Virus record (IMG/VR): IMGVR_UViG_3300037087_000760
Coordinates: 146,984 to 210,983 of that record
Length of the DNA stretch: 64,000 nucleotides
Strand: one strand, 5' to 3'
Position numbers and translations under genes: made by a program. Below the pieces are notes generated by a model. That model made no database searches. It had not been told where the DNA came from and worked only from the letters and a program-made list of their open reading frames with translations. Shown here piece by piece: positions 3,204 through 34,431 of this stretch (positions are counted from its first letter, which is position 1; the number at the start of each line of letters is the position of its first letter).

Positions 3204-3875
3204 ATGGACGAATTCACAAAATATGCTACCCGACATATGGGTATTAACAGTTTAACACTGGATAAATATAAATCAATAGCCTCAAATTACATTTCACCAA
3301 CTATTATTGAAGAAAGACAACTCAATGTTGTTACGATGGATGTGTTTTCACGATTGATGATGGATAGAATTATTTTTTTGGGTGTTCCCATTGATGATTA
3401 TGTTGCTAATATCATTCAAGCACAATTATTATTCTTAGAATCGGTTGATAGTGGTAAAGATATTCAAATTTATCTTAACAGTCCGGGTGGATCTGTTTAC
3501 GCTGGACTTGGTATCTACGATACAATGCAATATATCAACTCAGAGGTTGCTACTATTTGTACAGGTATGGCCGCCTCAATGGCCGCCATTCTTTTATGTG
3601 CCGGAACAAATGGTAAGAGAACTGCTTTACAACATTCTCGTATTTTGATCCATCAACCTATGGGAATGGCTGAAGGTCAAGCATCAGATATGGAGATCAC
3701 AGTTAAAGAAATTAATAAACTCAAAAAAGAGTTATACGAAATCATAGCTTTACATTCTGGTCAGACTTTTAAAAAAGTGGAGAAAGATTCGGATCGTGAT
3801 TATTGGATGACTTCAATCGAAGCTAAGAATTATGGTATTATTGATGAAATCCTTGAGAAGAAAATAGTCGGATAA
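3204..3875 (+). CDS. clpP: ATP-dependent Clp protease proteolytic subunit (Bacteroidota-like)
   Basis: DVFSRLMMDRIIFLG, YLNSPGGSV, GMAASMAA, IHQP, DRDYWM. Confidence 0.97.
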   Translation: MDEFTKYATRHMGINSLTLDKYKSIASNYISPTIIEERQLNVVTMDVFSRLMMDRIIFLGVPIDDYVANIIQAQLLFLESVDSGKDIQIYLNSPGGSVYAGLGIYDTMQYINSEVATICTGMAASMAAILLCAGTNGKRTALQHSRILIHQPMGMAEGQASDMEITVKEINKLKKELYEIIALHSGQTFKKVEKDSDRDYWMTSIEAKNYGIIDEILEKKIVG

Positions 3876-3906: not shown

Positions 3907-4861
3907 AGGAAATAAGAAAATTATGAAGATAAGAATTCAAGTGATTGAAAATAGTAATGAGTCACTATCAATATCCTATACTTTACAGAAACTAACCTTA
4001 GTTGGTTGGGTTAATTTACAATTATCTGATGTCTGGAAAGAAAAACTTCCCTATTTAGATGGAATTTCACCCATCCGATTCTTCGGAAAGGCCGGGAGTA
4101 GTTGTACTGATTCAGAAAAAGCTAAAACAGTCAAGACTTTTTTGAATAAATCCAAATATCTTGATGATTCTATGTACGAACTAATTTTTGGTTATAAACC
4201 TATACATAAGAAAGTTAGTTATCTCTATTAAGATGAAAAAAGAACCAATTCTTATTACAGAAGATGGTGTACCATACTATGATGAAAATAAGTTGGTCTG
4301 GGATACACATGATTTTTCCTCTGGTGATCCTGCTATAATAGTTAATCCTACATTTTTAGATCAAACACCTGTAAAATATGCTAAAAATATTGATCGAATG
4401 TTTTTTCATAGTAAGAAAAAAGCATTGGAATATATGAAAGATAACATAAGATTTTTAGCTTTGACTGACATTGATAAACTATCAAATGGTATTAATGAAG
4501 GAAATATAATTATCAATAGAAAAGATTTAATAAAATTACTCAGAAAAAGAATAAACGATGAAAACTGTTAGTATACCAGCTAATGTTCATTTACCCAAGG
4601 TCGAAGTCGAAATCGATCCACTTGATGTCTTAAAAGAATTAGAGGAAGAATTTTTAGATAAATATGGATGGATTGAAAAAAAAGGAAAGAAATATTTTTT
4701 AATGTATCCAGAACTCAGCTTTGATGAAAAGAGTTATCAAGTACGTCAAGTATCTACGAATGAAGTGAAATTTATTGATGCTATTCATACGATGCAAACT
4801 TTTTTACAAGAAAAAAATAAGAAATCAAAATCAAAACCAAAATCTTAACAAAAAACTCACA

Positions 4862-6907
4862 ATGAAAAAACTCGCAATTATTTTTATGTCATTACTATTT
4901 GTAGTAATGGTTGGTTATTCTCAGAAATTCAATCCTGATTCGGGATACAGATTAACAAAGGATACCTTACAATTAAATGAGGTTACTATCAGTTCCTTTC
5001 TTCCATACCAAGCAACAACCTTGATGCCAATCACTTTTAAGAATTTATATAAAGCTGATTTGGGATTGAAAAATTATGGTCAAGAACCAAGTAGGATTTT
5101 AAATACCACTCCATCTATAACCACTTATTCGGAATCAGGTGGTGATTGGGGTTATTCTTATATAAGATTAAGAGGTATTGATCAAACCAGAATAAACACC
5201 ACTCTTAATGGTGTTCCAATGAATGAACCAGAGGATCAAGGATGTTATTTCTCAAATTATCCTGATTTTCTTCAGTCTGTTGATATGTTACAAATACAGA
5301 GAGGAACAGGAATGACTAAAAATGGGTCAGCCAGTTATGTTGGAAGTATGAATTTCGAATCATATAAACCATCTACATCAAGTGTAGGGGCCTTTTTCGG
5401 AGCTGGATCATTCGGATCAACCAAAATTTCAATGAATACTGAACAAAATTGGAAAAAAGGTGGGTTATATGCTTCATTTTCTGACCTTGAAACAAAAGGT
5501 TATAAATATCATTCTGGTAATCATTCCAGAAGTGCTTTTCTTGTGGGAAATTATACAACTGGAAGAAATCAATTTAAATTTGTTGGTTTTGCTGGTGAAC
5601 AAATGAACCAATTAGCTTGGTTGGGTGTTCCAATAGATAGTATCAATTTAGACCGTAGATATAACACTTGTACCACTCGTGAAAATGATCATTTTAATCA
5701 ATATCATTTGCAATTTCATCACACCTATATTATAGATAATAAATCCAGATTTAATTATTGTGTCTATTATAATTATTTGAATGGTTTCTATACTTATGAT
5801 GGAATTCATAATGGAACATGGGATACTATATCATCTGGTAAATATAATTTATATGCATATCATCTTTATTCTAACTTCTTAGGTACTAATGTAAACTATT
5901 ATATTAAACTTGGACCATTGGATTTTTATACAGGGGTTAATGGTTCTAAGTATGATAGGGAACATCATGGAACAACAAATGATATCTATACTTACAAAAA
6001 TACAGGATTCAGAGATGATTTAAGTGGATTTGTTAAAGGTATTTTAAACGCTGGAAGTTTCAATTTTTATGGTGATGTTCAATATCGTTATACTACTTTT
6101 GTTTATAATGGTGATGTTTATCTACAACATTTTATTTGGAATTTTCTGAATTATAGTGTTGGTGTTGAATATAAAGCCAAACACAACATCCTTTATTATT
6201 CCATTGGTAAAACACATCGAGAACCTATTCGTAATGATATGTTTGGTGGTTATGATAATCTATCGTCTGATCCTCTTGGAAAAGCTGTTTTTTATGATTT
6301 AAAACCAGAATCAGTATTGGATCAGGAATTTGGCTATCGTTATATCATAGGAAATTTAAATTTGAACATCAATCTATATTATATGTTATTCAAAGATGAA
6401 TTAGTATTAACGGGAGCTTACGGGCCAACAGGATTACCACTTCATGAAAATGTAGATAACAGTTTCAGGTCAGGATTTGAATTCGATTTTAAATACAGAT
6501 GGAAATTTGGATTAACATTACTTCAAAATGTATCCTATAATTATAGTAAAATAACATGGACAAATAAACAAACAACTCCTGTCTTAACACCAGAATGGCT
6601 ATCAAATACTGAAGTAAATTATAATTACAAATGGTTTATAATCGGTTTGAGTGGTAGGTATCAAAGTTGGTCTTATATTGATCAAAGAAACAACTTCACC
6701 ATTCCAAGTTTTTATACACTGAATGCTATGATTGGATTAAAATGGTCATGGGGAGAATGGGATATTTATTTGAATAACATAACTGATCAAAAAACTTTAT
6801 CGAGTGGTATGGTTTCTGGTGATGGGACTCCTTATAATCAATTTATTCCTCTGTATTATGTGAATGCACCATTTAATTTCTTTACTGGACTTAAATTTAA
6901 AATGTAA
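4862..6907 (+). CDS. TonB-dependent outer-membrane receptor (resembles vitamin/thiamine-type TBDRs of Bacteroidota)
   Basis: Signal peptide MKKLAIIFMSLL, plug motif IRLRGIDQTRINTTLNGVPMN..QIQRG, LKPES, C-terminal GLKFKM beta strand; start taken at 4862. Confidence 0.9.
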   Translation: MKKLAIIFMSLLFVVMVGYSQKFNPDSGYRLTKDTLQLNEVTISSFLPYQATTLMPITFKNLYKADLGLKNYGQEPSRILNTTPSITTYSESGGDWGYSYIRLRGIDQTRINTTLNGVPMNEPEDQGCYFSNYPDFLQSVDMLQIQRGTGMTKNGSASYVGSMNFESYKPSTSSVGAFFGAGSFGSTKISMNTEQNWKKGGLYASFSDLETKGYKYHSGNHSRSAFLVGNYTTGRNQFKFVGFAGEQMNQLAWLGVPIDSINLDRRYNTCTTRENDHFNQYHLQFHHTYIIDNKSRFNYCVYYNYLNGFYTYDGIHNGTWDTISSGKYNLYAYHLYSNFLGTNVNYYIKLGPLDFYTGVNGSKYDREHHGTTNDIYTYKNTGFRDDLSGFVKGILNAGSFNFYGDVQYRYTTFVYNGDVYLQHFIWNFLNYSVGVEYKAKHNILYYSIGKTHREPIRNDMFGGYDNLSSDPLGKAVFYDLKPESVLDQEFGYRYIIGNLNLNINLYYMLFKDELVLTGAYGPTGLPLHENVDNSFRSGFEFDFKYRWKFGLTLLQNVSYNYSKITWTNKQTTPVLTPEWLSNTEVNYNYKWFIIGLSGRYQSWSYIDQRNNFTIPSFYTLNAMIGLKWSWGEWDIYLNNITDQKTLSSGMVSGDGTPYNQFIPLYYVNAPFNFFTGLKFKM

Positions 6908-7425
6908 TGAAAACGGAAGAAGCCATTAAAATTATAAAGTTAAATGAAAGAAAACCGAGATTCACCAAGAAAGGTGGTTTTATGGTTTCTTTTGAGAAAA
7001 AAGAGGGTCATATTTTAGCATCTCATCATTTTCCTGATAAACATACTGGTGAACCATTGATTCGAACTGAGGAAGAAGCTTGGAATTTAGCTAAAAGATT
7101 TGCCACATCTACTGATGATTCATATGTAAATATATATGTAACCGATAGTGAATGGCGTCCAGTAAAAGGATATTACGAAAAAACAATCAGGAGATATTAA
7201 TGATGGAGAAAACATGGAAAGATCTCAACGAAGATCAAAAAATAAAATACAAAGAATATTGTGATAACAAATATGGTAAAACCGTTGTATTTTGTGAAAC
7301 AGGTGAGCCTTTGTATTTTGATGAAAATATAAATTTAAGAATGTCATGGGTCGTTATCGAATTACTCTTTGGTAATTTAGAACCATTATTTTAATTGAAA
7401 CTTCGTTCTAAAAATATATATAATT

Positions 7426-7509
7426 GGCTGGGTGGCGGAACTGGTAGACGCGCGGGACTTAAAATCCCGTTCCTGTATGGGAGTGTGGGTTCAATTCCCA
7501 TCCCGGCTA
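7426..7509 (+). tRNA. tRNA-Leu(TAA), long variable arm
   Basis: Cloverleaf, anticodon loop CT-TAA-AA; AATATATATAAT motif directly upstream. Confidence 0.92.
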
Positions 7510-7510
7510 C

Positions 7511-7621
7511 AATCTCTGACATGGCACCCACTCTAAGGGACCAATACGAAAAGTTTGGGAGCTATCTGGAACAAGGCCGGAAGGCAGAAGGGATGGTAGT
7601 GGGGAGCCTAAATCAGAGATT
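7511..7621 (+). ncRNA. About 110-nt structured RNA with SRP-helix-8-like apical hairpin
   Basis: Terminal stem AATCTCTGA/TCAGAGATT, CCCACT/AGTGGG, apex CAAG-GCC-GGAA-GGC-AGAA. Confidence 0.5.
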
Positions 7622-7789
7622 TTTTAAATATTTTTATCAAATAATTTTTTTTATTCAGAAATTTGACATAATTTTGTAGTCCCTTGTTTGATAAAGAGTG
7701 TGAGTCAAAGGAAACAATAAAGATTTTTAAGTCTTGAGTTCCGGCTGTAAAGGTAGCATACTCTTGTTCTTTGATTTAATGATGAAAAA

Positions 7790-7998
7790 GTTAGTTCTCG
7801 AAGATTAACGGCACCAGAAAGGTGTACGACACTCGTTGAGAGTGTACGATACTAAGAGGTGTATCAGAATCTTTGAAACGGGTATAAACCCGTTTGGGGA
7901 GGCGAGCAGCCGAACCAAATACAAACTCATATAACTCCGGCCCGCAAGTCGGATGAAAATTGAGTATTCAGTTTTGCGGAACTGTTGGGATAGCTAAC
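7790..7998 (+). ncRNA. About 210-nt multi-branched structured RNA, unknown family
   Basis: Closing stem GTTAGTTCTCGA/TTGGGATAGCTAAC enclosing at least 7 hairpins; GC-rich and non-coding in an AT-rich genome. Confidence 0.65.
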
Positions 7999-8008
7999 AT
8001 AAATTTAT

Positions 8009-8088
8009 TTGTTGTGGTGATAAGTCCAAATCGATATGATTTAGTTCAGGAAGTATCGGACTAATTTGGTGAAAAACAAACACAACAA
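8009..8088 (+). ncRNA. About 80-nt structured RNA
   Basis: TTGTTGTG/CACAACAA closing stem, AGTCC/GGACT inner stem. Confidence 0.5.
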
Positions 8089-8091
8089 CAC

Positions 8092-8155
8092 GGACAGGTA
8101 GCTTAAGAGAGAGCCGTATCAACGAGACGGTGGTTTAAACCCACCTCTGTCCACA
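8092..8155 (+). ncRNA. Mini tRNA-like RNA lacking a normal anticodon arm
   Basis: GGACAGG/TCTGTCC-A acceptor, GCTT/GAGC D stem, GGTGG-TTTAAAC-CCACC T arm. Confidence 0.6.
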
Positions 8156-8326
8156 ATATAAAGGGTGCAAAACTTGTTTTAACAATGTTTTTCGGGACGG
8201 TTTAGTTAAATCGGTTATTCTTAACCAGCCCTTCTTAGAAAATTAGAAGAATCTGATACCCGATGGTGTATAGGATACCCGAAGTACAAGGGATGATCGG
8301 TGGCAACACAATCAACTTCTTTTAAC

Positions 8327-8458
8327 GAGTGTATTAGTGTAACGAAAGCACAGGCTGTTTGATGTTAGAGTAAGTTTTAGACGGCGGTCTTGGTCATTAG
8401 ATTGACAAAACTGAAATATCGTAGGTCGGATGAGGGTTCAAATCCCTCATACATTCCA
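8327..8458 (+). ncRNA. tRNA-like RNA with an 80-nt domain in place of the anticodon arm
   Basis: (G)AGTGTAT/ATACATT(C) acceptor, GTGT/GCAC D arm, GAGGG-TTCAAAT-CCCTC T arm. Confidence 0.65.
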
Positions 8459-8557
8459 AAAGGTGATGTGATGGAATAGTTTTTTCCATCCTGTTTTAAG
8501 GAGAGAACATTTGAGGATAAAGCGAGCCTACATCACAAACAGGATCACCAAATAAGG

Positions 8558-8640
8558 TGAGGGAAACAAAGTAGAGTACCTTTTCTTCGGATTGAGGCCT
8601 TCGGGCCGAGGGAAATGACCTGTTCTCCCTCAACTTTTTT
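8558..8640 (+). ncRNA. Structured RNA with UUCG hairpin, followed by U-tract (end of ncRNA array)
   Basis: TGAGGGA/TCCCTCA closing stem, GGCC-TTCG-GGCC, then T run. Confidence 0.5.
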
Positions 8641-8682
8641 AAAAAACGAAATTAAATTAAACTTTTTGAAAAAAAAGTTCTA

Positions 8683-8720
8683 AAATAGAAAAAAGAGACT
8701 TTATAAGTTAAATATATAAT
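8683..8720 (+). promoter_or_regulatory. Extended promoter of the Ile/Asn/Met/Gln tRNA operon
   Basis: AAATAGAAAAAAGAGACT-N10-AATATATAAT, near-identical to the - strand element at 23441-23478. Confidence 0.75.
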
Positions 8721-8731
8721 AAAAAAACATA

Positions 8732-8802
8732 TCCAGTAGGAACGTAAGTTCCGTTTTGGGACGCTCAGCGACCCAGAGGGGAAAACTCCCCGCAACTGGA
8801 TA
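8732..8802 (+). ncRNA. Four-way junction RNA in the leader
   Basis: TATCCAGT/ACTGGATA closing three hairpins (GGAAC-GTAA-GTTCC; TGGG..CCCA; GGGG..CCCC). Confidence 0.65.
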
Positions 8803-8813
8803 AACTTTTTGAA

Positions 8814-8984
8814 ATGATTATGACACAGAACATCCAAAATATGATTATTAATCAGATACCCGGTAAAAATACCGATTGGATGAACTTTGTCTATAACGAA
8901 TATAGAAAAAACCCAATCGGAAACGATTGGGTTTTTTTGTTTTATATGTCCACCATAGTTTTTAACTGGTGTTCTTTGAAATAA
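8814..8984 (+). CDS. Putative attenuator leader peptide MIMTQNIQNMIINQIPG... (56 aa, not in ORF track)
   Basis: 14 of first 15 codons are Met/Ile/Gln/Asn, using ATG, ATT, ATC, ATA, CAA, CAG, AAC, AAT; overlaps attenuator segments. Confidence 0.75.
   Translation: MIMTQNIQNMIINQIPGKNTDWMNFVYNEYRKNPIGNDWVFLFYMSTIVFNWCSLK
8906..8938 (+). terminator. Intrinsic terminator of attenuator (3:4 hairpin)
   Basis: CCCAATCG-GAAA-CGATTGGG-TTTTTTT; 5' arm also complementary to CCGATTGG at 8872-8879. Confidence 0.9.
8971..8981 (+). promoter_or_regulatory. boxA-like antitermination element GTTCTTTGAAA (also + 7766, 9431; - 22921-22931, 23252-23267)
   Basis: Resembles rrn boxA; copies noticed at entries to RNA-gene arrays. 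Confidence 0.6.
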
Positions 8985-9061
8985 TGATAAATCATATTCG
9001 GATTATAAGTTCAAAACTGATAATCTGAACATAAAATGTAAATAAAAATAAATTAGAAACT

Positions 9062-9439
9062 ATGGAAGATTTAAAAAAATTAGCGGATGATCTGAGTAAT
9101 CTCACCGTATTAGAGTGTTACCAGTTAGCTAAGATAATGAAAGAAGAATACGGAATAGAATCAAATACAAAAATTGTTGGTGTGAATGTATCACCAGTTC
9201 CAACTAAGGTAGTTGAAATTGAAAAAACAAGTTTTGATGTGATTCTAAAATCAGCAGGAACAACCAACAAACTTGGTGTTATCAAATCCATCAAAGAAAT
9301 GACAGGACAAAGTTTATTGGAAATTAAGAATCTCGTTGATAATGCACCAGCGAAACTAAAAGAAAATGTAAGTAAAGATGAAGCTATGTCTTTACTGAAT
9401 ATTCTGAAAGAATTAGGTGCAGAAATTGAAGTTCTTTGA
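9062..9439 (+). CDS. rplL: Ribosomal protein bL12 (L7/L12)
   Basis: NLTVLE..LAKIMKEEYGI, EKTSFDVIL, KLGVIK, ELGAEIEV. Confidence 0.95.
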   Translation: MEDLKKLADDLSNLTVLECYQLAKIMKEEYGIESNTKIVGVNVSPVPTKVVEIEKTSFDVILKSAGTTNKLGVIKSIKEMTGQSLLEIKNLVDNAPAKLKENVSKDEAMSLLNILKELGAEIEVL

Positions 9440-9450
9440 AAATAATAAAA

Positions 9451-9580
9451 AATGTAGTAGCGAGTTTGAGTGTTACTTCGTAGCTCAACAGTCGAGCATC
9501 AATCAGTTAAATTGAAAGTTGTGGGTGCGATTCCCACCGAACCCGAAAGGGTAATATCACTCAATGATTATCTCTACATT
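9451..9580 (+). ncRNA. tRNA-Asn(GTT) mimic embedded in a long terminal stem (Y-RNA-like)
   Basis: D arm, TCAAT-CAGTTAA-ATTGA anticodon arm and T arm on a 4-bp TTCG/CGAA stem continuing into TTGAGTG/CACTCAA and ATGTAG/CTACAT; no free acceptor end. Confidence 0.7.
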
Positions 9581-9588
9581 TTTTTAAT

Positions 9589-9666
9589 GGGTGTGTAGCT
9601 CAGTAGCGTTAGAGCGCGACACTGATAATGTCGAGGTCGTAGGTTCAAGTCCTACCATACCCACCA
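9589..9666 (+). tRNA. tRNA-Ile(GAT)
   Basis: Canonical cloverleaf, encoded CCA. Confidence 0.95.
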
Positions 9667-9676
9667 AAAATAACAC

Positions 9677-9758
9677 TGTGTCGTACGCAGCCGATCCTGA
9701 TAAGATCGAGAACTTGTAACTGGTGTTGAAAATGTGGGTTCGAATCCCACCGGCACAA
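9677..9758 (+). tRNA. Atypical D-armless tRNA-Ile(GAT)-like
   Basis: TGTGTCG/CGGCACA, CGATC-CTGATAA-GATCG, normal T arm, 8-nt D replacement, 25-nt variable region. Confidence 0.7.
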
Positions 9759-9767
9759 CAAAAATTT

Positions 9768-9839
9768 GGGTTGGTAGTACTAATGAAAAACGGCGGCCTG
9801 TTAAGCCGCGAGATGTGGGTTCAAGTCCCACCCGGCCCT
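9768..9839 (+). tRNA. tRNA-Asn(GTT), weak D arm
   Basis: GCGGC-CTGTTAA-GCCGC, intact acceptor and T arms. Confidence 0.8.
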
Positions 9840-9848
9840 CAATATTAT

Positions 9849-9922
9849 TCCTCAGTAGCTCAGCTGGTTAGAGCATTTGACTGTTAATCAAAGGGTCACA
9901 GGTCCAAATCCTGTCTGGGGAG
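9849..9922 (+). tRNA. tRNA-Asn(GTT)
   Basis: Canonical cloverleaf TCCTCAG...CTGGGGA-G. Confidence 0.93.
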
Positions 9923-9928
9923 CAAAAT

Positions 9929-10004
9929 TCGGAATGTTTGTCTGTGATTGGGTGCACCACACAGATAATAAAGGAAAAATGTGGTTCAATTCCACCATTC
10001 CGAG
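9929..10004 (+). ncRNA. tRNA-like RNA (acceptor + T arm + one hairpin), no clear anticodon
   Basis: TCGGAATG/CATTCCGA-G, TGTCTGTG/CACAGATA, GTGG-TTCAATT-CCAC. Confidence 0.55.
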
Positions 10005-10012
10005 CAAAAATA

Positions 10013-10104
10013 GGGAGTGTAGCTGATTTGGTTTAGCGGCAGACCGTTAATCTGTGACTGAAAATATTGAAATAAAGTTGGTTCGACCCCATCCTCTCCC
10101 GCCA
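10013..10104 (+). tRNA. tRNA-Asn(GTT) with long AT-rich variable region
   Basis: GCAGA-CCGTTAA-TCTGT, ends G-CCA. Confidence 0.75.
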
Positions 10105-10112
10105 GTACATAT

Positions 10113-10192
10113 TGTGGTGTATCCCCCATGTCTTATAAACATGCATTAAAAGGGTAATAGCGTGTATGTGGGTTCGAGTCCCACCACCACAA
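10113..10192 (+). tRNA. Atypical D-armless tRNA-Ile(TAT)-like
   Basis: TGTGGTG/CACCACA, CATGT-CTTATAA-ACATG, same architecture as 9677-9758. Confidence 0.7.
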
Positions 10193-10197
10193 CAAAT

Positions 10198-10269
10198 GGT
10201 CGGGTAAGCTAACGGTTAAACTGGATGTCTTATACACATCTTTTAAGAGTTCGAATCTCTTCCTGACTA
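10198..10269 (+). tRNA. tRNA-Ile(TAT)
   Basis: GATGT-CTTATAC-ACATC, cloverleaf. Confidence 0.88.
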
Positions 10270-10274
10270 CAAAT

Positions 10275-10350
10275 GGCGAGATAGCTCAGACGGTTTTAGA
10301 GCGTCGGATTCATAACCCGGAGGTCGAGGGTTCAACTCCCTCTCTCGCTA
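10275..10350 (+). tRNA. tRNA-Met(CAT), elongator type
   Basis: Cloverleaf, loop TTCATAA. Confidence 0.9.
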
Positions 10351-10358
10351 CCCAAAAT

Positions 10359-10430
10359 AGTCCTATGGCGTAACGCGAAGCGTGACTCCCCTTGAAGGAG
10401 ATGGTACTGGTTCGAATCCAGTTAGGACTG
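10359..10430 (+). tRNA. tRNA-Gln(TTG)
   Basis: AGTCCTA/TAGGACT-G, loop CCTTGAA. Confidence 0.82.
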
Positions 10431-10435
10431 CAAAT

Positions 10436-10521
10436 ATCAATGTGAACGGAATGGTTATCGTAGAGGTCTCATAAGCCTTTCAACTCGTTGAGTTGTGGTG
10501 GTTCGAATCCACTCATTGATA
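10436..10521 (+). tRNA. tRNA(CAT) Met or Ile2, long variable arm
   Basis: GAGGT-CTCATAA-GCCTT, CAACTC-GTT-GAGTTG variable hairpin. Confidence 0.8.
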
Positions 10522-10527
10522 CAAAAT

Positions 10528-10598
10528 AGTCCTGTGGTGTAACGGTAGCATGCGAGCCTTTGAAGCTTTGGGTACAGATTCGAATTCTGTCAGGACTG
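10528..10598 (+). tRNA. tRNA-Gln(TTG)
   Basis: Cloverleaf, loop CTTTGAA. Confidence 0.88.
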
Positions 10599-10604
10599 CA
10601 AAAT

Positions 10605-10677
10605 TGTTCTGTCGTATAATTGGCAGTACAGCACCCTCTGAAGGTGTATGGTGTAGGTTCGAGTCCTACTGGAACAG
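10605..10677 (+). tRNA. tRNA-Gln(CTG)
   Basis: Cloverleaf, loop CTCTGAA. Confidence 0.9.
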
Positions 10678-10682
10678 CAAAT

Positions 10683-10754
10683 GGTTCTGTGGTGTAATGC
10701 GTAGCACGAGTGATTCTGAATCACTTGGTTAAGGTTCGAATCCTTACAGAACTA
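10683..10754 (+). tRNA. tRNA-Gln(CTG)
   Basis: Cloverleaf, loop TTCTGAA. Confidence 0.88.
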
Positions 10755-10755
10755 C

Positions 10756-11070
10756 ATGAAAAAGGACATAAGAAAGACATTTCGTAAAGAGGTATTCACC
10801 AGAGATAAGTATACTTGTAAAGGATGTGATCAAAAACTTGATGAATCTGAATTGGATGCACATCACATCACTGACCGCAATGAAATGCCAAATGGTGGAT
10901 ATGTGAAAGAGAACGGTATAACTCTTTGTAAGAAAGATTGTCATATAAAAGCTGAAAAATTTCATATAACAGATGGAAAAGAATGGGTAGAGGGATTTCA
11001 TCCAGATGACTTATACGAGAAGATTGATTCATCTAAGGGGAAGGCTGTTTTAATGTCTCAAATTATTTAG
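10756..11070 (+). CDS. HNH endonuclease
   Basis: VFTRDKYTCKGC..DAHHI..NGITLC..CH. Confidence 0.9.
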   Translation: MKKDIRKTFRKEVFTRDKYTCKGCDQKLDESELDAHHITDRNEMPNGGYVKENGITLCKKDCHIKAEKFHITDGKEWVEGFHPDDLYEKIDSSKGKAVLMSQII

Positions 11071-11436
11071 AATAATGAGAAATAATTTTTTTATTGATTT
11101 AATTTTTGTATCTTTGTATTGTATAAATTTAAATTATATGAAACAGTTTATTAAACCATCAACATTCAAAGAAAGAAAAAAAAGACCAGATAAAACGAAA
11201 GTTGATGAATTTATCGAAAAGTTCAACAAACTTATAAAAAAGGGAGAATTAGAGGCTAATGATGTACTCAATAAACTCCCATACTTAAATGAATCTGAGT
11301 TTAATCTGGCTGTTGCTATTGCTCGTGAAAATGGTTGGCAATTAACTCAATTTGAAGATAATTACAACACGACATCTTACCAACTTACAGAAATAAAACT
11401 TTCTGTTTAAAAAACAATATATAATCATTGTTGTAT

Positions 11437-11507
11437 TGTCCTATGGTGTAATGGCAACACGTGGGTTTTTGGAGCCTTAGTTCTAAGTTCGAATCTTAGT
11501 AGGACAA
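11437..11507 (+). tRNA. tRNA-Gln(TTG), standalone
   Basis: TGTCCTA/TAGGACA, loop TTTTGGA; AATATATAAT upstream. Confidence 0.85.
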
Positions 11508-11512
11508 CTCTA

Positions 11513-12847: not shown

Positions 12848-12872
12848 TGTATATATTATTTTTTATGGGCAC

Positions 12873-12896
12873 AAAAAAACCGTGAATTCACGGTTT
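12873..12896 (-). terminator. Intrinsic terminator
   Basis: AAACCGTG-AATT-CACGGTTT with U-tract on - strand. Confidence 0.75.
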
Positions 12897-13543
12897 AATG
12901 TTATATTATATTAGAAGTTAAAAGTTAATACCAGTATAATCAATAAGATCTTTCATATGTTCATTCTTATGTCCTTCGGCGTGTTCCATAGCTTCAAAGA
13001 TATCTGTCTTACTTCTTTCAGTTTTGAATCCATTTGTAATTATATCAACATATTTAGGATCTGTCCAACTTTTAAATCCAGTTCCATTGATTGCATATGG
13101 GTTGAATCCCCAATGAGCTTTACACTCAACACCATCTTCAATTGTTGGTTGAAAAAAATCCAAAGATCCATAATTTCCAACAAAAAATCTTTTCTTTGTT
13201 AGTTTATCTTCAAACATCAATCTATATACATTCTTTAAGTCTATCCAATAATATCCGTAGCAAATTCTATATCCGTATTTTTGGGTTTCGCTGAATTTAT
13301 TTGGATTGAATGAAACATTTATCTTTTTTGGATTTTTTGCTTCTATTACTTTATAGTAATTGTCGAATGTAATTCCAATCTCATGAAATTGACCATCTAT
13401 TAATCCTGCATAAGATCTCCAACCCAGACCAAAAGCACAATCATACCAATCCCATTCACGGGCAGGGATATTCTCTTTATAAAGTGGTTGAACGACTAAC
13501 TTTCCTTTACGGATAGTCAGTCTTTCAATCGGATTTATTGTTT

Positions 13544-33237: not shown

Positions 33238-34431
33238 TTAAACACTAATATAAACCGTTACCCATGTTGTACTGTTTGCCCAATAACCAGTTATCCATTG
33301 TCCACCAACATATGTGGCTATAACTATATATTTTTGTTCTGTCCTGAAATTATTTGCTAAATCGTTTATTTCAAAATACACATCATAAATTCCAATATCT
33401 GTCATTCCAGTTATTGGAACTAAATCATTATACCCATATATCGTGATAACAGAATCATATTTACTAATTATTCCATCTACATTATCTGTTATTCCAGAAA
33501 TAAATATATCTTGAAGATTAATTGAATTATATGTTGTTCCACTTGTAAGAATAAAAGCGGTTGTTGAACCACTGGTGATTCCAGTTGTTACCCCAGAAAG
33601 AACAGGATTCCATGTAAAAACAGGTGGAGTAGTATCAATTGGAGGATTATTAATAGTTAAGTTTCTATATCTTTCAGATCTCAATACCCAATTTATTCTA
33701 CTATTTGCTTGGTCTGTATTAAATTCACTTAGGAATTGCAATTTCACTTTTTCTTCTGTATCTAAACCAATCAATAATGTCAAAGCATCAATTTTTTCAA
33801 TGGTTCTGATATTAGCATATGGTATATAAATTAATGAATTACCATCTATATCAATAACTTTTAATTCGGTAGAACCAGTTGAGGTTGGGATTGTATAATT
33901 AACATAATCAGATATAATTGAATTGTAATAAAGTCCACTGAAGAAACTTGTTCTTTTGAATTGATCAGGATTTGATAGTGAACTTTGTCCAAGGTTTGCC
34001 ATAAGTATTTCCAAAACCACTTTGTTCTTCGTTGATTTATTATTGAAATAAATTTGTGGAATTCTTTTAGCACTATTACCAGTTAAAACTAACATTTGAC
34101 CCATTGTTCTTATTTGAGTTGGATCATCAGCGTAATAATATTCTATGTATTGTTCGGTTTCTTGAACCCACATCGGATCTATTGGAGTATATTTTGCTCT
34201 AACCATTAAAAAAGTTATATTATTACCCAAGAATCCATATAAAAGTGGTTGATCAGAAGATTCAGGATTTAATATCATTTGAGCCAGATTAAAATTTTCA
34301 TAATGAAACTCTAATCCCTCTAAATTTAATTTACCTTTTAAGTTAGGTCCTTCTACCACAATCATTGCACATTCATAAGGTCTAATAATCTTATCAGCGG
34401 CGTAGAACATATTTGGTTGTATATATGGCAT
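33238..34431 (-). CDS. Putative virion structural protein
   Basis: S/G/T-rich, DTTPPV Ig-like segment. Confidence 0.5.
   Translation of the reverse strand: MPYIQPNMFYAADKIIRPYECAMIVVEGPNLKGKLNLEGLEFHYENFNLAQMILNPESSDQPLLYGFLGNNITFLMVRAKYTPIDPMWVQETEQYIEYYYADDPTQIRTMGQMLVLTGNSAKRIPQIYFNNKSTKNKVVLEILMANLGQSSLSNPDQFKRTSFFSGLYYNSIISDYVNYTIPTSTGSTELKVIDIDGNSLIYIPYANIRTIEKIDALTLLIGLDTEEKVKLQFLSEFNTDQANSRINWVLRSERYRNLTINNPPIDTTPPVFTWNPVLSGVTTGITSGSTTAFILTSGTTYNSINLQDIFISGITDNVDGIISKYDSVITIYGYNDLVPITGMTDIGIYDVYFEINDLANNFRTEQKYIVIATYVGGQWITGYWANSTTWVTVYISV

What the first reader, a model, noticed from the sequence alone, without database searches (positions are those of the whole stretch)
7669..8640. 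One-kilobase non-coding operon of about nine tandem structured RNAs
Seen: after a TAATTTTG promoter, back-to-back GC-richer units each closed by a terminal helix and separated by A/T spacers like the tRNA arrays (about 7694-7765, 7790-7998, 8009-8088, 8092-8155, 8161-8233, 8254-8313, 8327-8458, 8462-8549, 8558-8640). There is a boxA-like element at 7766 and no ORF of 60 aa or more. Inference: a polycistronic array of small RNAs (decoys or scaffolds), or one large ornate RNA like the tRNA-associated GOLLD/ROOL classes.
Basis: partly seen in the sequence, partly recalled or inferred. Interest (0 to 1): 0.66.

Follow-up and report, generated by a model that had tools for sequence, protein, structure and literature searches.

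The report
Phage operon of small structured RNAs
A giant peat-soil phage of Bacteroidota carries a one-kilobase gene-free stretch that is most likely an operon of about eight separately folding small RNAs, several of them tRNA look-alikes, headed by the same anti-termination signal that bacteria use for ribosomal RNA; the function of these RNAs is unknown.

Summary
Window 7669-8640 has no ORF under any stop-codon reassignment. It is richer in G+C than its flanks and folds better on the + strand (z -4.4).

It starts with a 40-nt promoter block conserved in nine places across this phage clade. A leader hairpin follows, then TGTTCTTTGA, which I show to be the rrn boxA core of a Bacteroidota genome.

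Behind that lie modules, each closed by its own helix:
- a 214-nt multi-helix RNA with no Rfam family, five relatives, and 7 base pairs changed on both sides;
- an 80-nt hairpin, 95% identical in a relative;
- a tRNA-like RNA without an anticodon loop;
- two cloverleaf-like units;
- a 130-nt tRNA-like RNA with an extra domain;
- a pseudoknot-capable unit and a terminal hairpin with a U tract.

In relatives the modules are shuffled, lost or replaced. This favours an array over one large RNA. There is no GOLLD, ROOL or tmRNA match. Transcription could not be tested, because no RNA runs hold this phage.

In passing: all five tRNA clusters of this phage record are preceded by a leader peptide built from exactly the amino acids of the downstream tRNAs, followed by a terminator/antiterminator and a boxA. 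This looks like ribosome-mediated attenuation of tRNA operons. I found no paper describing it.

The parts
7640..7681 (+). Conserved promoter block P1 (AATAATTTTTTTTAT..AAATTTGACATAATTTTGTAGTC). It contains TAATTTTG at 7669-7676, which fits the Bacteroidota -7 motif TAnnTTTG.
   Evidence: 86-97% identical at nine sites: genome 88040, window minus strand about 23510, L002, L006 (two sites), L009, L011, L034 and L005. The consensus motif is from my own knowledge.
7695..7764 (+). Leader hairpin in front of boxA, in the position of a boxB.
   Evidence: Folds with closing helix AGAGUGU/AUACUCU, z -1.0. L006 has a different hairpin at the same place, closed by AAUCUCU/AGAGAUU. In L009, hairpin H takes this place. 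L034 and L005 have none.
7765..7774 (+). boxA, TGTTCTTTGA (rrn-type anti-termination signal).
   Evidence: Invariant GTTC[T/A]TTGA in five phages. The same 9-mer lies 270 and 91 nt before, and 272 nt after, the only 16S gene of a Chitinophagales genome. It also lies 144-318 nt after nearly every 16S gene of a Peribacillus genome.
7788..8001 (+). 'Big' RNA, a new structured family. P1 is GUUAG/CUAAC plus UCYC/GGGA. P2 is CGAAG..CUUUG with a variable tip. A hairpin P3 follows. Helix Pa encloses UAUAAC and hairpin Pb. Pb has an invariant loop CCGCAA, which can pair with the invariant UUGCGG downstream.
   Evidence: z -5.5. Model R1 finds L006, L034 and L009/L008 at 150-170 bits and L005 at 81.7 bits. 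Seven pairs changed on both sides; 93.8% of cells paired, against 24-58% when partners are slid. No Rfam match.
8009..8088 (+). Hairpin H, an 80-nt stem-loop with a highly conserved core.
   Evidence: 94.8% identical over 77 nt to L009 4100-4175, where it lies directly behind the promoter. z -1.5.
8092..8153 (+). tRNA-like RNA without an anticodon loop. It has a 7-bp acceptor stem, a D arm and a T arm with loop UUUAAAC. The 'anticodon arm' is a short stem capped by 3 nt.
   Evidence: Cloverleaf MFE, z -3.0. The ortholog L009 4713-4779 scores 43.9 bits on Rfam tRNA. One pair changed on both sides and three on one side, all kept paired.
8161..8233 (+). U5, a cloverleaf-like unit with three hairpins inside a 6-bp closing helix.
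   Evidence: Fold only, z -1.1. No relative was found. This is the weakest unit.
8245..8320 (+). U6, a cloverleaf-like unit. The closing helix is AGAAG/CUUCU. It has a variable long arm and a conserved arm CCC-GAAGUACAA-GGG.
   Evidence: The window and L009 fold into the same architecture; for L006 it is read from the sequence, as its fold did not reproduce the closing helix. z -1.3, so the support is comparative only.
8328..8457 (+). Long tRNA-like RNA. It has an acceptor stem, a D-like arm, a canonical T arm (GAGGG UUCAAAU CCCUC) and an extra branched domain of about 75 nt where the anticodon arm should be.
   Evidence: Rfam tRNA 30.5 bits, gathering score 29. z -2.2. With introns allowed, ARAGORN calls tRNA-Stop(UUA), but with two mismatches in a 5-bp stem. 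A positional counterpart, L006 4594-4720, scores 35.4 bits.
8462..8549 (+). U8. The closing helix is GGUGAU/AUCACC. Inside it, GUGAUG/CAUCAC and CCUGUUU/AAACAGG cross, so a pseudoknot or a switch is possible.
   Evidence: z -2.8. 78% identical to L009 4893-5014. Two closing pairs changed on both sides, to GGUGUA/UACACC.
8558..8640 (+). U9, a long terminal hairpin (GAGGGA..UCUCCCUC) followed by AAC and UUUUUU. It is the probable end of the unit.
   Evidence: Conserved in L009, with the closing helix changed to GAAUGAG/CUCAUUC. z -1.0. The terminator scan did not list it.
8657..8730 (+). Adjacent, not part of the array: conserved block P2 (AAACTTTTTGA..CTAAAATAGAAAAAAGAGACT..AATATATAA) that precedes leader ORFs.
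   Evidence: 84-89% identical in L006 and L009. The same block lies before the leader ORFs at window minus strand 23478 and at genome positions about 13.3, 73.7 and 88.7 kb.
8820..8979 (+). Adjacent: leader ORF MTQNIQNMIINQI.., antiterminator segment ACCGAUUGG (8873-8881), terminator 8905-8938 and a second boxA at 8970-8979. These lie before L7/L12 and the Ile/Asn/Met/Gln tRNA array.

Best explanation
This is a stable-RNA operon of a very large Bacteroidota phage. Identical copies lie on contigs of 597 kb (L014) and, by the protein index, 737 kb.

Shown:
- a promoter block shared by the RNA operons of this phage clade;
- an rrn-type boxA just downstream of it;
- a string of modules that each fold on their own and are conserved, module by module, in related phages. 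They comprise one new RNA of about 210 nt with a likely pseudoknot, an 80-nt hairpin, two tRNA-like RNAs that cannot decode in the normal way, cloverleaf-like units, a pseudoknot-capable unit, and a terminal hairpin with a U tract.

Inferred:
- host RNA polymerase starts about 7680;
- NusB/S10 bind boxA, so the polymerase runs through this highly structured, untranslated RNA without Rho termination, as in rRNA operons;
- the precursor is cut at the tRNA-like modules by RNase P and 3' tRNA-processing enzymes, and elsewhere by other RNases. Separate small RNAs are released, as with phage T4's RNA C and RNA D in its tRNA cluster.

The array fills a variable slot between promoter block P1 and the leader-peptide attenuator that controls the L7/L12-tRNA operon. 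Its neighbours are all translation genes. The most likely field of action is therefore tRNA and ribosome biology during takeover, for example mimics that occupy tRNA-binding or tRNA-cutting proteins. That last step is a guess.
For: Non-coding.

Strand and structure.

Promoter block at nine sites, each followed by RNA genes.

boxA identical to the rrn boxA of a Chitinophagales genome, and enriched on the + strand.

Module-wise conservation with changes on both sides of pairs: the Big RNA, the tRNA-like unit, U8 and U9.

Module shuffling, loss and replacement in L006, L009, L034, L005, L011 and L002.

tRNA-model matches to two modules or their orthologs.

The phage's L7/L12 is closest to Bacteroidota proteins.

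T4 RNA C and RNA D remain of unknown function: PMC9697503.
Against: There are no expression data. All 17 runs that hold the sequence are DNA, from peat and pond metagenomes, so the transcript, its ends and its processing are all inferred.

Only five relatives exist, two to four per module. Covariation counts are therefore small, and several helices never vary.

Five of nine units have z-scores near -1. U5 has no relative at all.

The terminal U tract stands 3 nt from the hairpin and shrinks to 4 U in L009. The unit may therefore read through into the next operon.

Nothing points to a specific function.
Confidence: 0.62

Rival explanations
1. The stretch is the long structured 5' part of one transcript. 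That transcript runs from P1 through the leader peptide, L7/L12 and the tRNA array. On this view the stretch is either upstream cistrons of the same precursor or a cis-acting leader, not an operon of its own.
For: P1 is followed by the P2/leader block within 0-1.1 kb in 7 of 9 cases, all co-oriented. The U9 terminator is weak and is missing in L006. In L005 and L034 an ORF follows the Big RNA without a clear terminator.
Against: The P2 block is itself strongly conserved and looks like a promoter (..AATATATAA about 30-100 nt before the ATG). The Leu/Tyr operon has P1 and P2 back to back with nothing between them, so the cargo is dispensable for control of the tRNA operon. A cis-regulatory role for eight independent modules has no precedent.
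Confidence: 0.15
2. The stretch is a decaying tRNA array: remnants of tRNA genes and spacers with no present function.
For: Two modules are tRNA-like but lack a usable anticodon arm. The region lies between tRNA genes. Modules are lost in relatives. Several units do not fold better than shuffled sequence.
Against: Helices are kept through changes on both sides of a pair. Hairpin H is 95% identical between phages whose L7/L12 protein is only 79% identical. The largest module is not tRNA-like at all. The stretch also has its own conserved promoter and boxA.
Confidence: 0.1
3. The stretch is one large ornate RNA of about 960 nt that acts as a single folded particle, in the manner of GOLLD or ROOL.
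For: It neighbours tRNA genes in a phage. It is long, G+C-richer and non-coding, and the whole stretch gives z -4.4.
Against: No Rfam match appears at E up to 10. Every module closes on itself. Module order and content differ between relatives. No long-range helix was found to be conserved.
Confidence: 0.06
4. The 130-nt module at 8328-8457 is an intron-bearing suppressor tRNA(UUA) that reads UAA stop codons.
For: With introns allowed, ARAGORN calls tRNA-Stop(tta) with a 37-nt intron. Rfam tRNA gives 30.5 bits.
Against: The proposed anticodon stem has two mismatches and a G-U in five pairs, and the intron sits at 33/34. The genes of the window read well in the standard code. Reading TAA as a residue opens no frame here.
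Confidence: 0.05

Closest known systems
Small stable RNAs RNA C and RNA D in the tRNA gene cluster of phage T4
   Same: They are phage-encoded small RNAs of unknown function sitting among the phage's tRNA genes. From my own knowledge they are made from the same precursors and cut by tRNA-processing enzymes. PMC9697503 confirms that they are expressed and still without a known function.
   Different: There is no sequence similarity: a sensitive BLAST of 7400-9000 against 50,697 phage records found only tRNA-Leu matches. Here there are about eight modules instead of two, one of them a 210-nt pseudoknotted RNA. They have their own promoter and an rrn-type boxA.
rRNA operon leader (boxB-boxA) with NusB/S10-dependent anti-termination
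   Same: The boxA core GTTCTTTGA is identical to that of a Bacteroidota rrn leader and spacer. It lies between a promoter and a long, untranslated, highly structured RNA. In the window, L006 and L009 it is preceded by a hairpin.
   Different: It is carried by a phage and heads small RNAs and tRNA arrays, not rRNA. Binding of Nus factors is not shown. The hairpin is absent in L034 and L005.
GOLLD and ROOL large RNAs
   Same: Long non-coding RNA genes found beside tRNA genes in phages and prophages.
   Different: No match to either Rfam model. The stretch is modular rather than one fold, and its module order changes between relatives.
tRNA-like RNAs without decoding function (the tmRNA tRNA-like domain, mascRNA, YrlA)
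   Same: An acceptor stem plus T arm is kept while the anticodon arm is shortened or replaced. Such shapes are substrates of RNase P and other tRNA enzymes.
   Different: tmRNA scores 18.2 bits against a gathering score of 47. There is no tag reading frame, and ARAGORN finds no tmRNA. No mascRNA or YrlA hit falls on these modules.

Membership tests
GOLLD / ROOL (Rfam) | Match to the family covariance model | tested here: not met
   cmscan of the window at gathering scores, and of 7350-9100 and 7680-8660 at E up to 10, lists neither family.
GOLLD / ROOL (Rfam) | One large fold whose domains are joined by long-range helices | tested here: not met
   Each module closes on itself. Modules are moved or missing in relatives.
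GOLLD / ROOL (Rfam) | Lies beside tRNA genes in a phage | tested here: met
   tRNA-Leu is at 7426-7510 and the tRNA array at 9477-11508.
tRNA (RF00005) | Score at or above the gathering score of 29 bits | tested here: met
   8328-8456 scores 30.5 bits. For 8092-8153 the window copy is not listed, but its ortholog L009 4713-4779 scores 43.9 bits.
tRNA (RF00005) | A 5-bp anticodon stem with a 7-nt loop, so that the RNA can decode | tested here: not met
   In 8092-8153 the stem is capped by 3 nt, and by 4 nt in L009 (read from the sequence). In 8328-8457 a branched domain of about 75 nt takes the place of the anticodon arm. ARAGORN needs an intron and a mismatched stem to call it.
tmRNA (RF00023) | Model match, a tag reading frame, and a tRNA-like domain formed by the two ends | tested here: not met
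   18.2 bits against a gathering score of 47, covering only the T arm and one helix. ARAGORN -m finds none in the region or in the 211-kb record. No tag-like frame appears in the three-frame translation.
rrn-type boxA anti-termination site | Sequence equal to the boxA of rRNA operons in the host phylum | tested here: met
   GTTCTTTGA lies at G001:C5 67424 and 67603 (before the 16S gene at 67694-69215) and at 69487 (after it). In G005 it lies 144-318 nt behind nearly every 16S gene.
rrn-type boxA anti-termination site | Lies in the transcript between a promoter and a long untranslated structured RNA | tested here: met
   It is 89 nt behind TAATTTTG and 14 nt before the Big RNA. The same layout holds in L006, L009, L034 and L005.
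rrn-type boxA anti-termination site | Bound by NusB-S10 and makes RNA polymerase resistant to termination | not testable with these tools
   Needs binding and transcription assays.
Phage T4 RNA C / RNA D type stable RNAs | Co-transcribed with tRNAs and released by tRNA-processing enzymes as stable RNAs | not testable with these tools
   No RNA run holds this phage.
Phage T4 RNA C / RNA D type stable RNAs | Sequence relationship | tested here: not met
   blastn (word size 11) against all phage records gives only tRNA-Leu matches.
Ribosome-mediated attenuator (adjacent element 8820-8940, not the finding itself) | A short leader ORF with a run of regulatory codons, plus mutually exclusive antiterminator and terminator hairpins | tested here: met
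   A 20-aa ORF, MTQNIQNMIINQIP.K.PIG, is conserved in six relatives. The terminator is at 8905-8938. Without the terminator's 3' strand, CCGAUUGG pairs with CCAAUCGG at -14.1 kcal/mol. Leader composition matches the downstream tRNAs in 5 of 5 clusters.

The most novel reading that the evidence does not exclude
The array is the RNA arm of a phage-run system for controlling tRNA supply. On this reading the anticodon-less and over-long tRNA look-alikes, together with the new 210-nt RNA, are made from the same control region as the leader-peptide attenuators that sense shortage of particular charged tRNAs. They would act as mimics that tie up host enzymes which cut, modify or sense tRNA, while the phage's own tRNA arrays are switched on when needed.
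Probability: 0.12. Interest if true: 0.85.

Novelty: new variant of a known kind. Interest (0 to 1): 0.62.

Why it matters
Very large phages carry their own translation parts, but their non-coding RNA genes have hardly been looked at. This stretch gives three things.

First, it gives a concrete, conserved set of phage small RNAs to test. One of them is a new structured family with a likely pseudoknot. Two are tRNA mimics that cannot decode.

Second, it is evidence that a phage borrows the host's rRNA anti-termination signal for its stable-RNA and tRNA operons.

Third, it gives a genomic frame (P1, variable RNA cargo, P2, leader peptide, terminator, boxA, tRNA array) that explains how these operons are built.

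The side finding may matter more than the array. Leader peptides spelled out in the amino acids of the downstream tRNAs would be a direct feedback from decoding to tRNA gene expression. I found no paper describing this, and it is testable in vitro.

Tried and rejected
Other genetic codes: reading TGA, TAG or TAA as a residue opens no convincing frame. The flanking genes read in table 11. Rejected.

Known RNA families: Rfam at gathering scores and at E up to 10 gave only a borderline tRNA and chance-level hits.

tmRNA and suppressor tRNA: considered and rejected.

CRISPR-like or other direct repeats: none.

Searches for more relatives that led nowhere:
- an exact 20-mer of the tRNA-like unit in IMG/VR gave 0 hits;
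- CTGTTGGGATANCTAAC in IMG/VR gave 13 hits, all chance;
- a gapped pattern in IMG/VR gave 5 hits, and in the species genomes 120 or more, all chance on inspection. The genome scan was wasted on too loose a pattern;
- the TonB-receptor protein as bait in IMG/VR gave none;
- the one metagenome scan gave a single useful locus, L034;
- model R1 against the 735-kb phage LR756501 gave no match, and in the phage's own record only the copy itself;
- two of twelve contig look-ups had no DNA or no upstream flank.

Reads: 17 runs hold the stretch and all are DNA. Laying four of them (1,701 letters, within the operators' limit) showed the identical sequence, with no variants or joints in 7669-8640. It therefore gave no population covariation and no expression evidence.

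RNAalifold on MAFFT alignments of U6 and of 7509-7628 was not informative.
Full report
WHERE THE WINDOW COMES FROM

The window is the last 64 kb of a 210,983-bp IMG/VR virus record, with 30.6% G+C and 67 tRNA genes.

Copies 100% identical over 7400-9060 lie on metagenome contigs, among them one of 597 kb (L014). The protein index lists a contig of 737 kb for the identical L7/L12. The sequence is found in peat metagenomes of 14 studies.

The phage encodes a ribosomal protein L7/L12 at 9062-9439. Its nearest cellular relatives are from Bacteroidota (Chitinophagaceae, Rikenellaceae, Alistipes; 50-56% identity). A clade of phage versions at 60-100% identity includes the 735-kb phage LR756501.

This is therefore a very large phage of Bacteroidota.

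THE OBSERVATION

- TAATTTTG lies at 7669-7676 and TGTTCTTTGA at 7765-7774.
- No ORF of 60 aa or more lies inside 7669-8640. None appears if one stop codon is read as a residue.
- G+C is 0.39-0.46, against 0.28-0.33 in the neighbouring genes.
- The + strand folds clearly better than shuffled sequence (z -4.4). The - strand folds less so (z -2.3).

Taken singly, four units are significant. They are 7788-8000 (z -5.5), 8090-8157 (-3.0), 8460-8552 (-2.8) and 8326-8459 (-2.2). The rest lie near -1.

Thermodynamics alone would thus carry only half of the claim. The rest rests on comparison with relatives.

RELATIVES

Exact-word and pattern scans of IMG/VR found nothing real. The relatives came from contigs that encode the phage-type L7/L12, from one metagenome pattern hit (L034), and from a covariance-model hit (L005).

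L006, L009 (and L008), L034, L005, L011 and L002 all carry the same 40-nt block as window 7640-7681. The record itself has the block again at 88,040 and, on the minus strand, at window position about 23,510. In every case RNA genes or structured non-coding sequence follow. I call this block P1. It contains the Bacteroidota -7 promoter motif TAnnTTTG (the motif is from my own knowledge).

boxA

GTTC[T/A]TTGA is invariant behind P1 in the window, L006, L009, L034 and L005. TGTTCTTTGA occurs 7 times on the + strand of the record, against about 0.5 expected.

To test whether this really is a boxA, I located the 9-mer and the 16S genes in five genomes:
- In a Chitinophagales genome the single 16S gene (C5:67694-69215) has the motif 270 and 91 nt upstream and 272 nt downstream.
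- In a Peribacillus genome it follows nearly every one of 18 16S genes by 144-318 nt.

These are the leader and spacer positions of the rrn boxA. The phage element is therefore the host-type rrn anti-termination signal, not merely similar to one. Binding of NusB/S10 is inferred.

A hairpin stands before boxA in the window (7695-7764), in L006 and in L009. It is different in sequence each time. L034 and L005 have none.

THE MODULES

(1) 7788-8001, the 'Big' RNA

The four-way alignment and a model-based five-way alignment give the following features:
- an invariant closing helix GUUAG/CUAAC, continued by UCYC/GGGA;
- an invariant helix base CGAAG/CUUUG carrying a tip that differs completely between phages;
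- a hairpin P3;
- a helix Pa that encloses the conserved UAUAAC and a hairpin Pb.

Pa and Pb hold 7 pairs changed on both sides. 93.8% of cells are paired, against 86% after shuffling and 24-58% when the partners are slid by 1-3 columns.

The 6-nt loop of Pb, CCGCAA, is invariant in all five. It is the exact complement of an invariant UUGCGG 26-27 nt downstream. A pseudoknot is likely but cannot covary. L005 keeps the loop and lacks the partner.

No Rfam family matches. There is no copy in LR756501 and no second copy in the record.

(2) 8009-8088, hairpin H

H is 94.8% identical to L009 4100-4175. The L7/L12 proteins of the two phages are only 79% identical. In L009 it lies first behind P1, in the place of the leader hairpin. 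In L006 and L009 the window's H position holds a different hairpin.

(3) 8092-8153, tRNA-like RNA

This is a clean cloverleaf. Its ortholog in L009 passes Rfam's tRNA threshold at 43.9 bits. The acceptor stem keeps pairing through one change on both sides and one on one side. But the 'anticodon arm' is a stem capped by 3 nt in the window and 4 nt in L009, and it differs in sequence. This RNA has the acceptor/T half of a tRNA and no anticodon.

(4) 8161-8233, U5

A cloverleaf-like fold only. No relative was found, so it stays unconfirmed.

(5) 8245-8320, U6

The same four-way layout holds in the window and L009 by fold, and in L006 as read from the sequence. It has a closing helix RGAAG/CUUCY and a conserved arm CCC-9 nt-GGG. 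There is no energetic support.

(6) 8328-8457, long tRNA-like RNA

It scores 30.5 bits on Rfam tRNA. It has a 7-bp acceptor stem and a canonical T arm, with a branched domain of about 75 nt in between. ARAGORN's call of an intron-bearing tRNA(UUA) needs a stem with two mismatches. I do not accept it.

(7) 8462-8549, U8, and (8) 8558-8640, U9

Both are conserved in L009. Their closing helices changed on both sides: GGUGAU/AUCACC to GGUGUA/UACACC, and GAGGGA/UCCCUC to GAAUGAG/CUCAUUC. In U8 two further helices cross, so a pseudoknot or a switch is possible. U9 ends 3 nt before UUUUUU.

ARRAY OR ONE RNA?

Every module closes on itself, and 2-11 A/U-rich bases separate the modules. Between relatives the modules are moved (H), absent (U8 and U9 in L006), reduced to one or two (L034, L005, L011), or missing altogether (L002; the Leu/Tyr operon of the window).

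This is what independent genes in an operon do. It is not what the domains of one fold do. I therefore favour the array, at about 0.6, over a single ornate RNA, at about 0.06.

Processing at the tRNA-like modules by RNase P and 3' tRNA enzymes is the obvious route to separate RNAs, but it is inferred.

The nearest precedent is phage T4. Its tRNA cluster also holds two small RNAs, RNA C and RNA D, still of unknown function (PMC9697503). There is no sequence similarity to them.

CONTEXT, AND A SIDE FINDING THAT MAY BE THE BIGGER ONE

Twenty bases behind the U tract begins a second conserved block, P2 (8657-8730). A highly conserved cloverleaf follows (8731-8805; z -5.4), and then a small ORF at 8820.

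In six relatives this ORF is a 20-residue peptide, MTQNIQNMIINQIP(V/A/T/E)K(I/T)PIG. After it come a strong terminator (8905-8938), a second boxA (8970), L7/L12, and then a tRNA array made only of Ile, Asn, Met and Gln tRNAs. Residues 3-13 of the peptide are only Gln, Asn, Ile and Met.

The segment CCGAUUGG (8874-8881) repeats the 3' strand of the terminator. It pairs with the terminator's 5' strand when the 3' strand is left out (-14.1 kcal/mol). In the full leader, CAUCCAA inside the regulatory codons pairs with UUGGAUG. This is the classical 1:2 / 2:3 / 3:4 attenuator layout.

The same layout (P2, leader ORF, terminator, boxA-like GTTCTTTRA, tRNAs) precedes every multi-tRNA cluster of the record:
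- NLYYLYLYLY before Tyr plus seven Leu tRNAs (window minus strand 23420-22186);
- KHSKHFSSSSKWF before His, Phe, Ser, Lys and Trp;
- GMDCGRDDR before Val, Asp, Leu, Arg, Gly, Cys and Met;
- PRPERPTEVTTIVVEETAFA before Glu, Arg, Pro, Thr, Ala and Val.

In a 5 x 5 table the best 10-residue window of each leader is 90-100% made of its own cluster's amino acids. It is 0-60% for most other clusters, and up to 80% for the largest set.

I read this as ribosome-mediated attenuation of tRNA operons. Slow decoding of exactly those codons lets the polymerase pass into the genes for exactly those tRNAs. Full-text searches found no description of such a thing.

In the window the Q/N/I/M leader has one extra C, so its frame runs on through the terminator. 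Four independent assemblies agree, and the effect is unknown.

HOW THE FINDING FITS IN

P1 is followed by P2 within 0-1.1 kb in 7 of 9 cases. The non-coding array is thus the cargo of a variable slot between P1 and the attenuator-controlled tRNA operon. The slot holds:
- nothing in the Leu/Tyr operon;
- about 160 nt in L002;
- one or two modules in L011;
- about 1 kb in the window, L006 and L009.

Whether P2 is a second promoter, or the A-rich untranslated leader of the peptide ORF, is open. If it is the latter, the array is the 5' part of one long precursor.

LIMITS

- No RNA data exist for this phage. Laid DNA contigs showed no variants.
- There are five relatives at most.
- Function is unknown. 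My proposal of tRNA mimics acting on tRNA-binding or tRNA-cutting proteins during takeover rests only on shape and neighbourhood.

VERDICT

The feature is real and correctly described. It is best read as a boxA-headed phage operon of small structured RNAs. That makes it a new variant of a known kind, namely phage small RNAs in tRNA gene regions. One of its RNAs belongs to a new family.

Noticed in passing
window 8820-8979 (+); window 23420-23260 (-); record positions about 13.3, 73.7 and 88.7 kb; L002 1304; L005 4121; L006 4813; L009 5490; L011 5808; L161 217: Every multi-tRNA cluster of this phage record (5 of 5) is preceded by a short leader ORF whose core is made of the amino acids of the tRNAs that follow. 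TQNIQNMIINQI precedes Ile/Asn/Met/Gln. NLYYLYLYLY precedes Tyr/Leu. KHSKHFSSSSKWF precedes His/Phe/Ser/Lys/Trp. GMDCGRDDR precedes Val/Asp/Leu/Arg/Gly/Cys/Met. PRPERPTEVTTIVVEETAFA precedes Glu/Arg/Pro/Thr/Ala/Val. A terminator with an alternative antiterminator and a boxA-like GTTCTTTRA then follow. This looks like ribosome-mediated attenuation of tRNA operons. No paper was found.
   Followed up: partly
window 8859-8863: The Q/N/I/M leader ORF of the window has one extra C (CCCGG against CCGG in six relatives). Its frame therefore runs through the terminator to 8984 (56 aa) instead of stopping after 20 aa. The sequence is identical in four independent assemblies, L013-L016.
   Followed up: partly
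window 8731-8805 (+): A very stable cloverleaf (8-bp closing helix, three hairpins, z -5.4) lies between block P2 and the leader ORF. It is about 97% identical in L009, with one pair changed on both sides, and it is absent in L006. A 14-nt direct repeat, TAAACTTTTTGAAA, lies at 8658 and 8801.
   Followed up: partly
window 23240-23085 (-), window 33547-33699 (-); record 12854-12985, 88936-89065, 89296-89424, 89549-89679: The phage has a class of tRNA genes of about 130-160 nt with normal acceptor, D and T arms and an extra 40-80 nt. In at least three of them the insertion lies between the D arm and the anticodon stem (position 26/27), forms a long hairpin and ends in AGTTACTTCG. These three are Arg UCU, Leu UAA and Tyr GUA by my reading of the sequence. 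It is not clear whether this is an extra arm or an unusual intron.
   Followed up: partly
window 4775-6907 (+): The phage encodes a TonB-dependent outer-membrane receptor (Plug plus beta-barrel domains; 710 aa as listed from a TTG start, 681 aa as called on the identical contigs L013-L016). It is also present in the relative L008. ClpP lies at 3204-3875.
   Followed up: no
window 7511-7626 (+): A structured 115-nt element lies directly behind tRNA-Leu (z -3.5), closed by AUCUCUGA/UCAGAGAU and followed by UUUUUU. L006 has a different sequence with the same closing layout, UGUUCUGA/UCAGAACA.
   Followed up: partly
record 88057-88450 (outside the window): A second P1 promoter block heads another non-coding unit. 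It consists of a leader hairpin, a boxA-like CGTTCTTAAA and about 250 nt of G+C-richer structured sequence ending in a G-rich hairpin with a U tract. It is unrelated in sequence to the window's array.
   Followed up: no
window 9477-9541 (+): Rfam finds a truncated-looking tRNA (39.9 bits, model positions 4-67) that ARAGORN does not call. Counterparts lie in L006 5448-5510 and L009 6102-6166 at 47 bits.
   Followed up: no
L031 9009-11024, L032 3018-4577 and 11192-12381: More distant members of the phage clade carry an EF-G-like GTPase and a class I aminoacyl-tRNA synthetase next to their L7/L12 and tRNA arrays.
   Followed up: no
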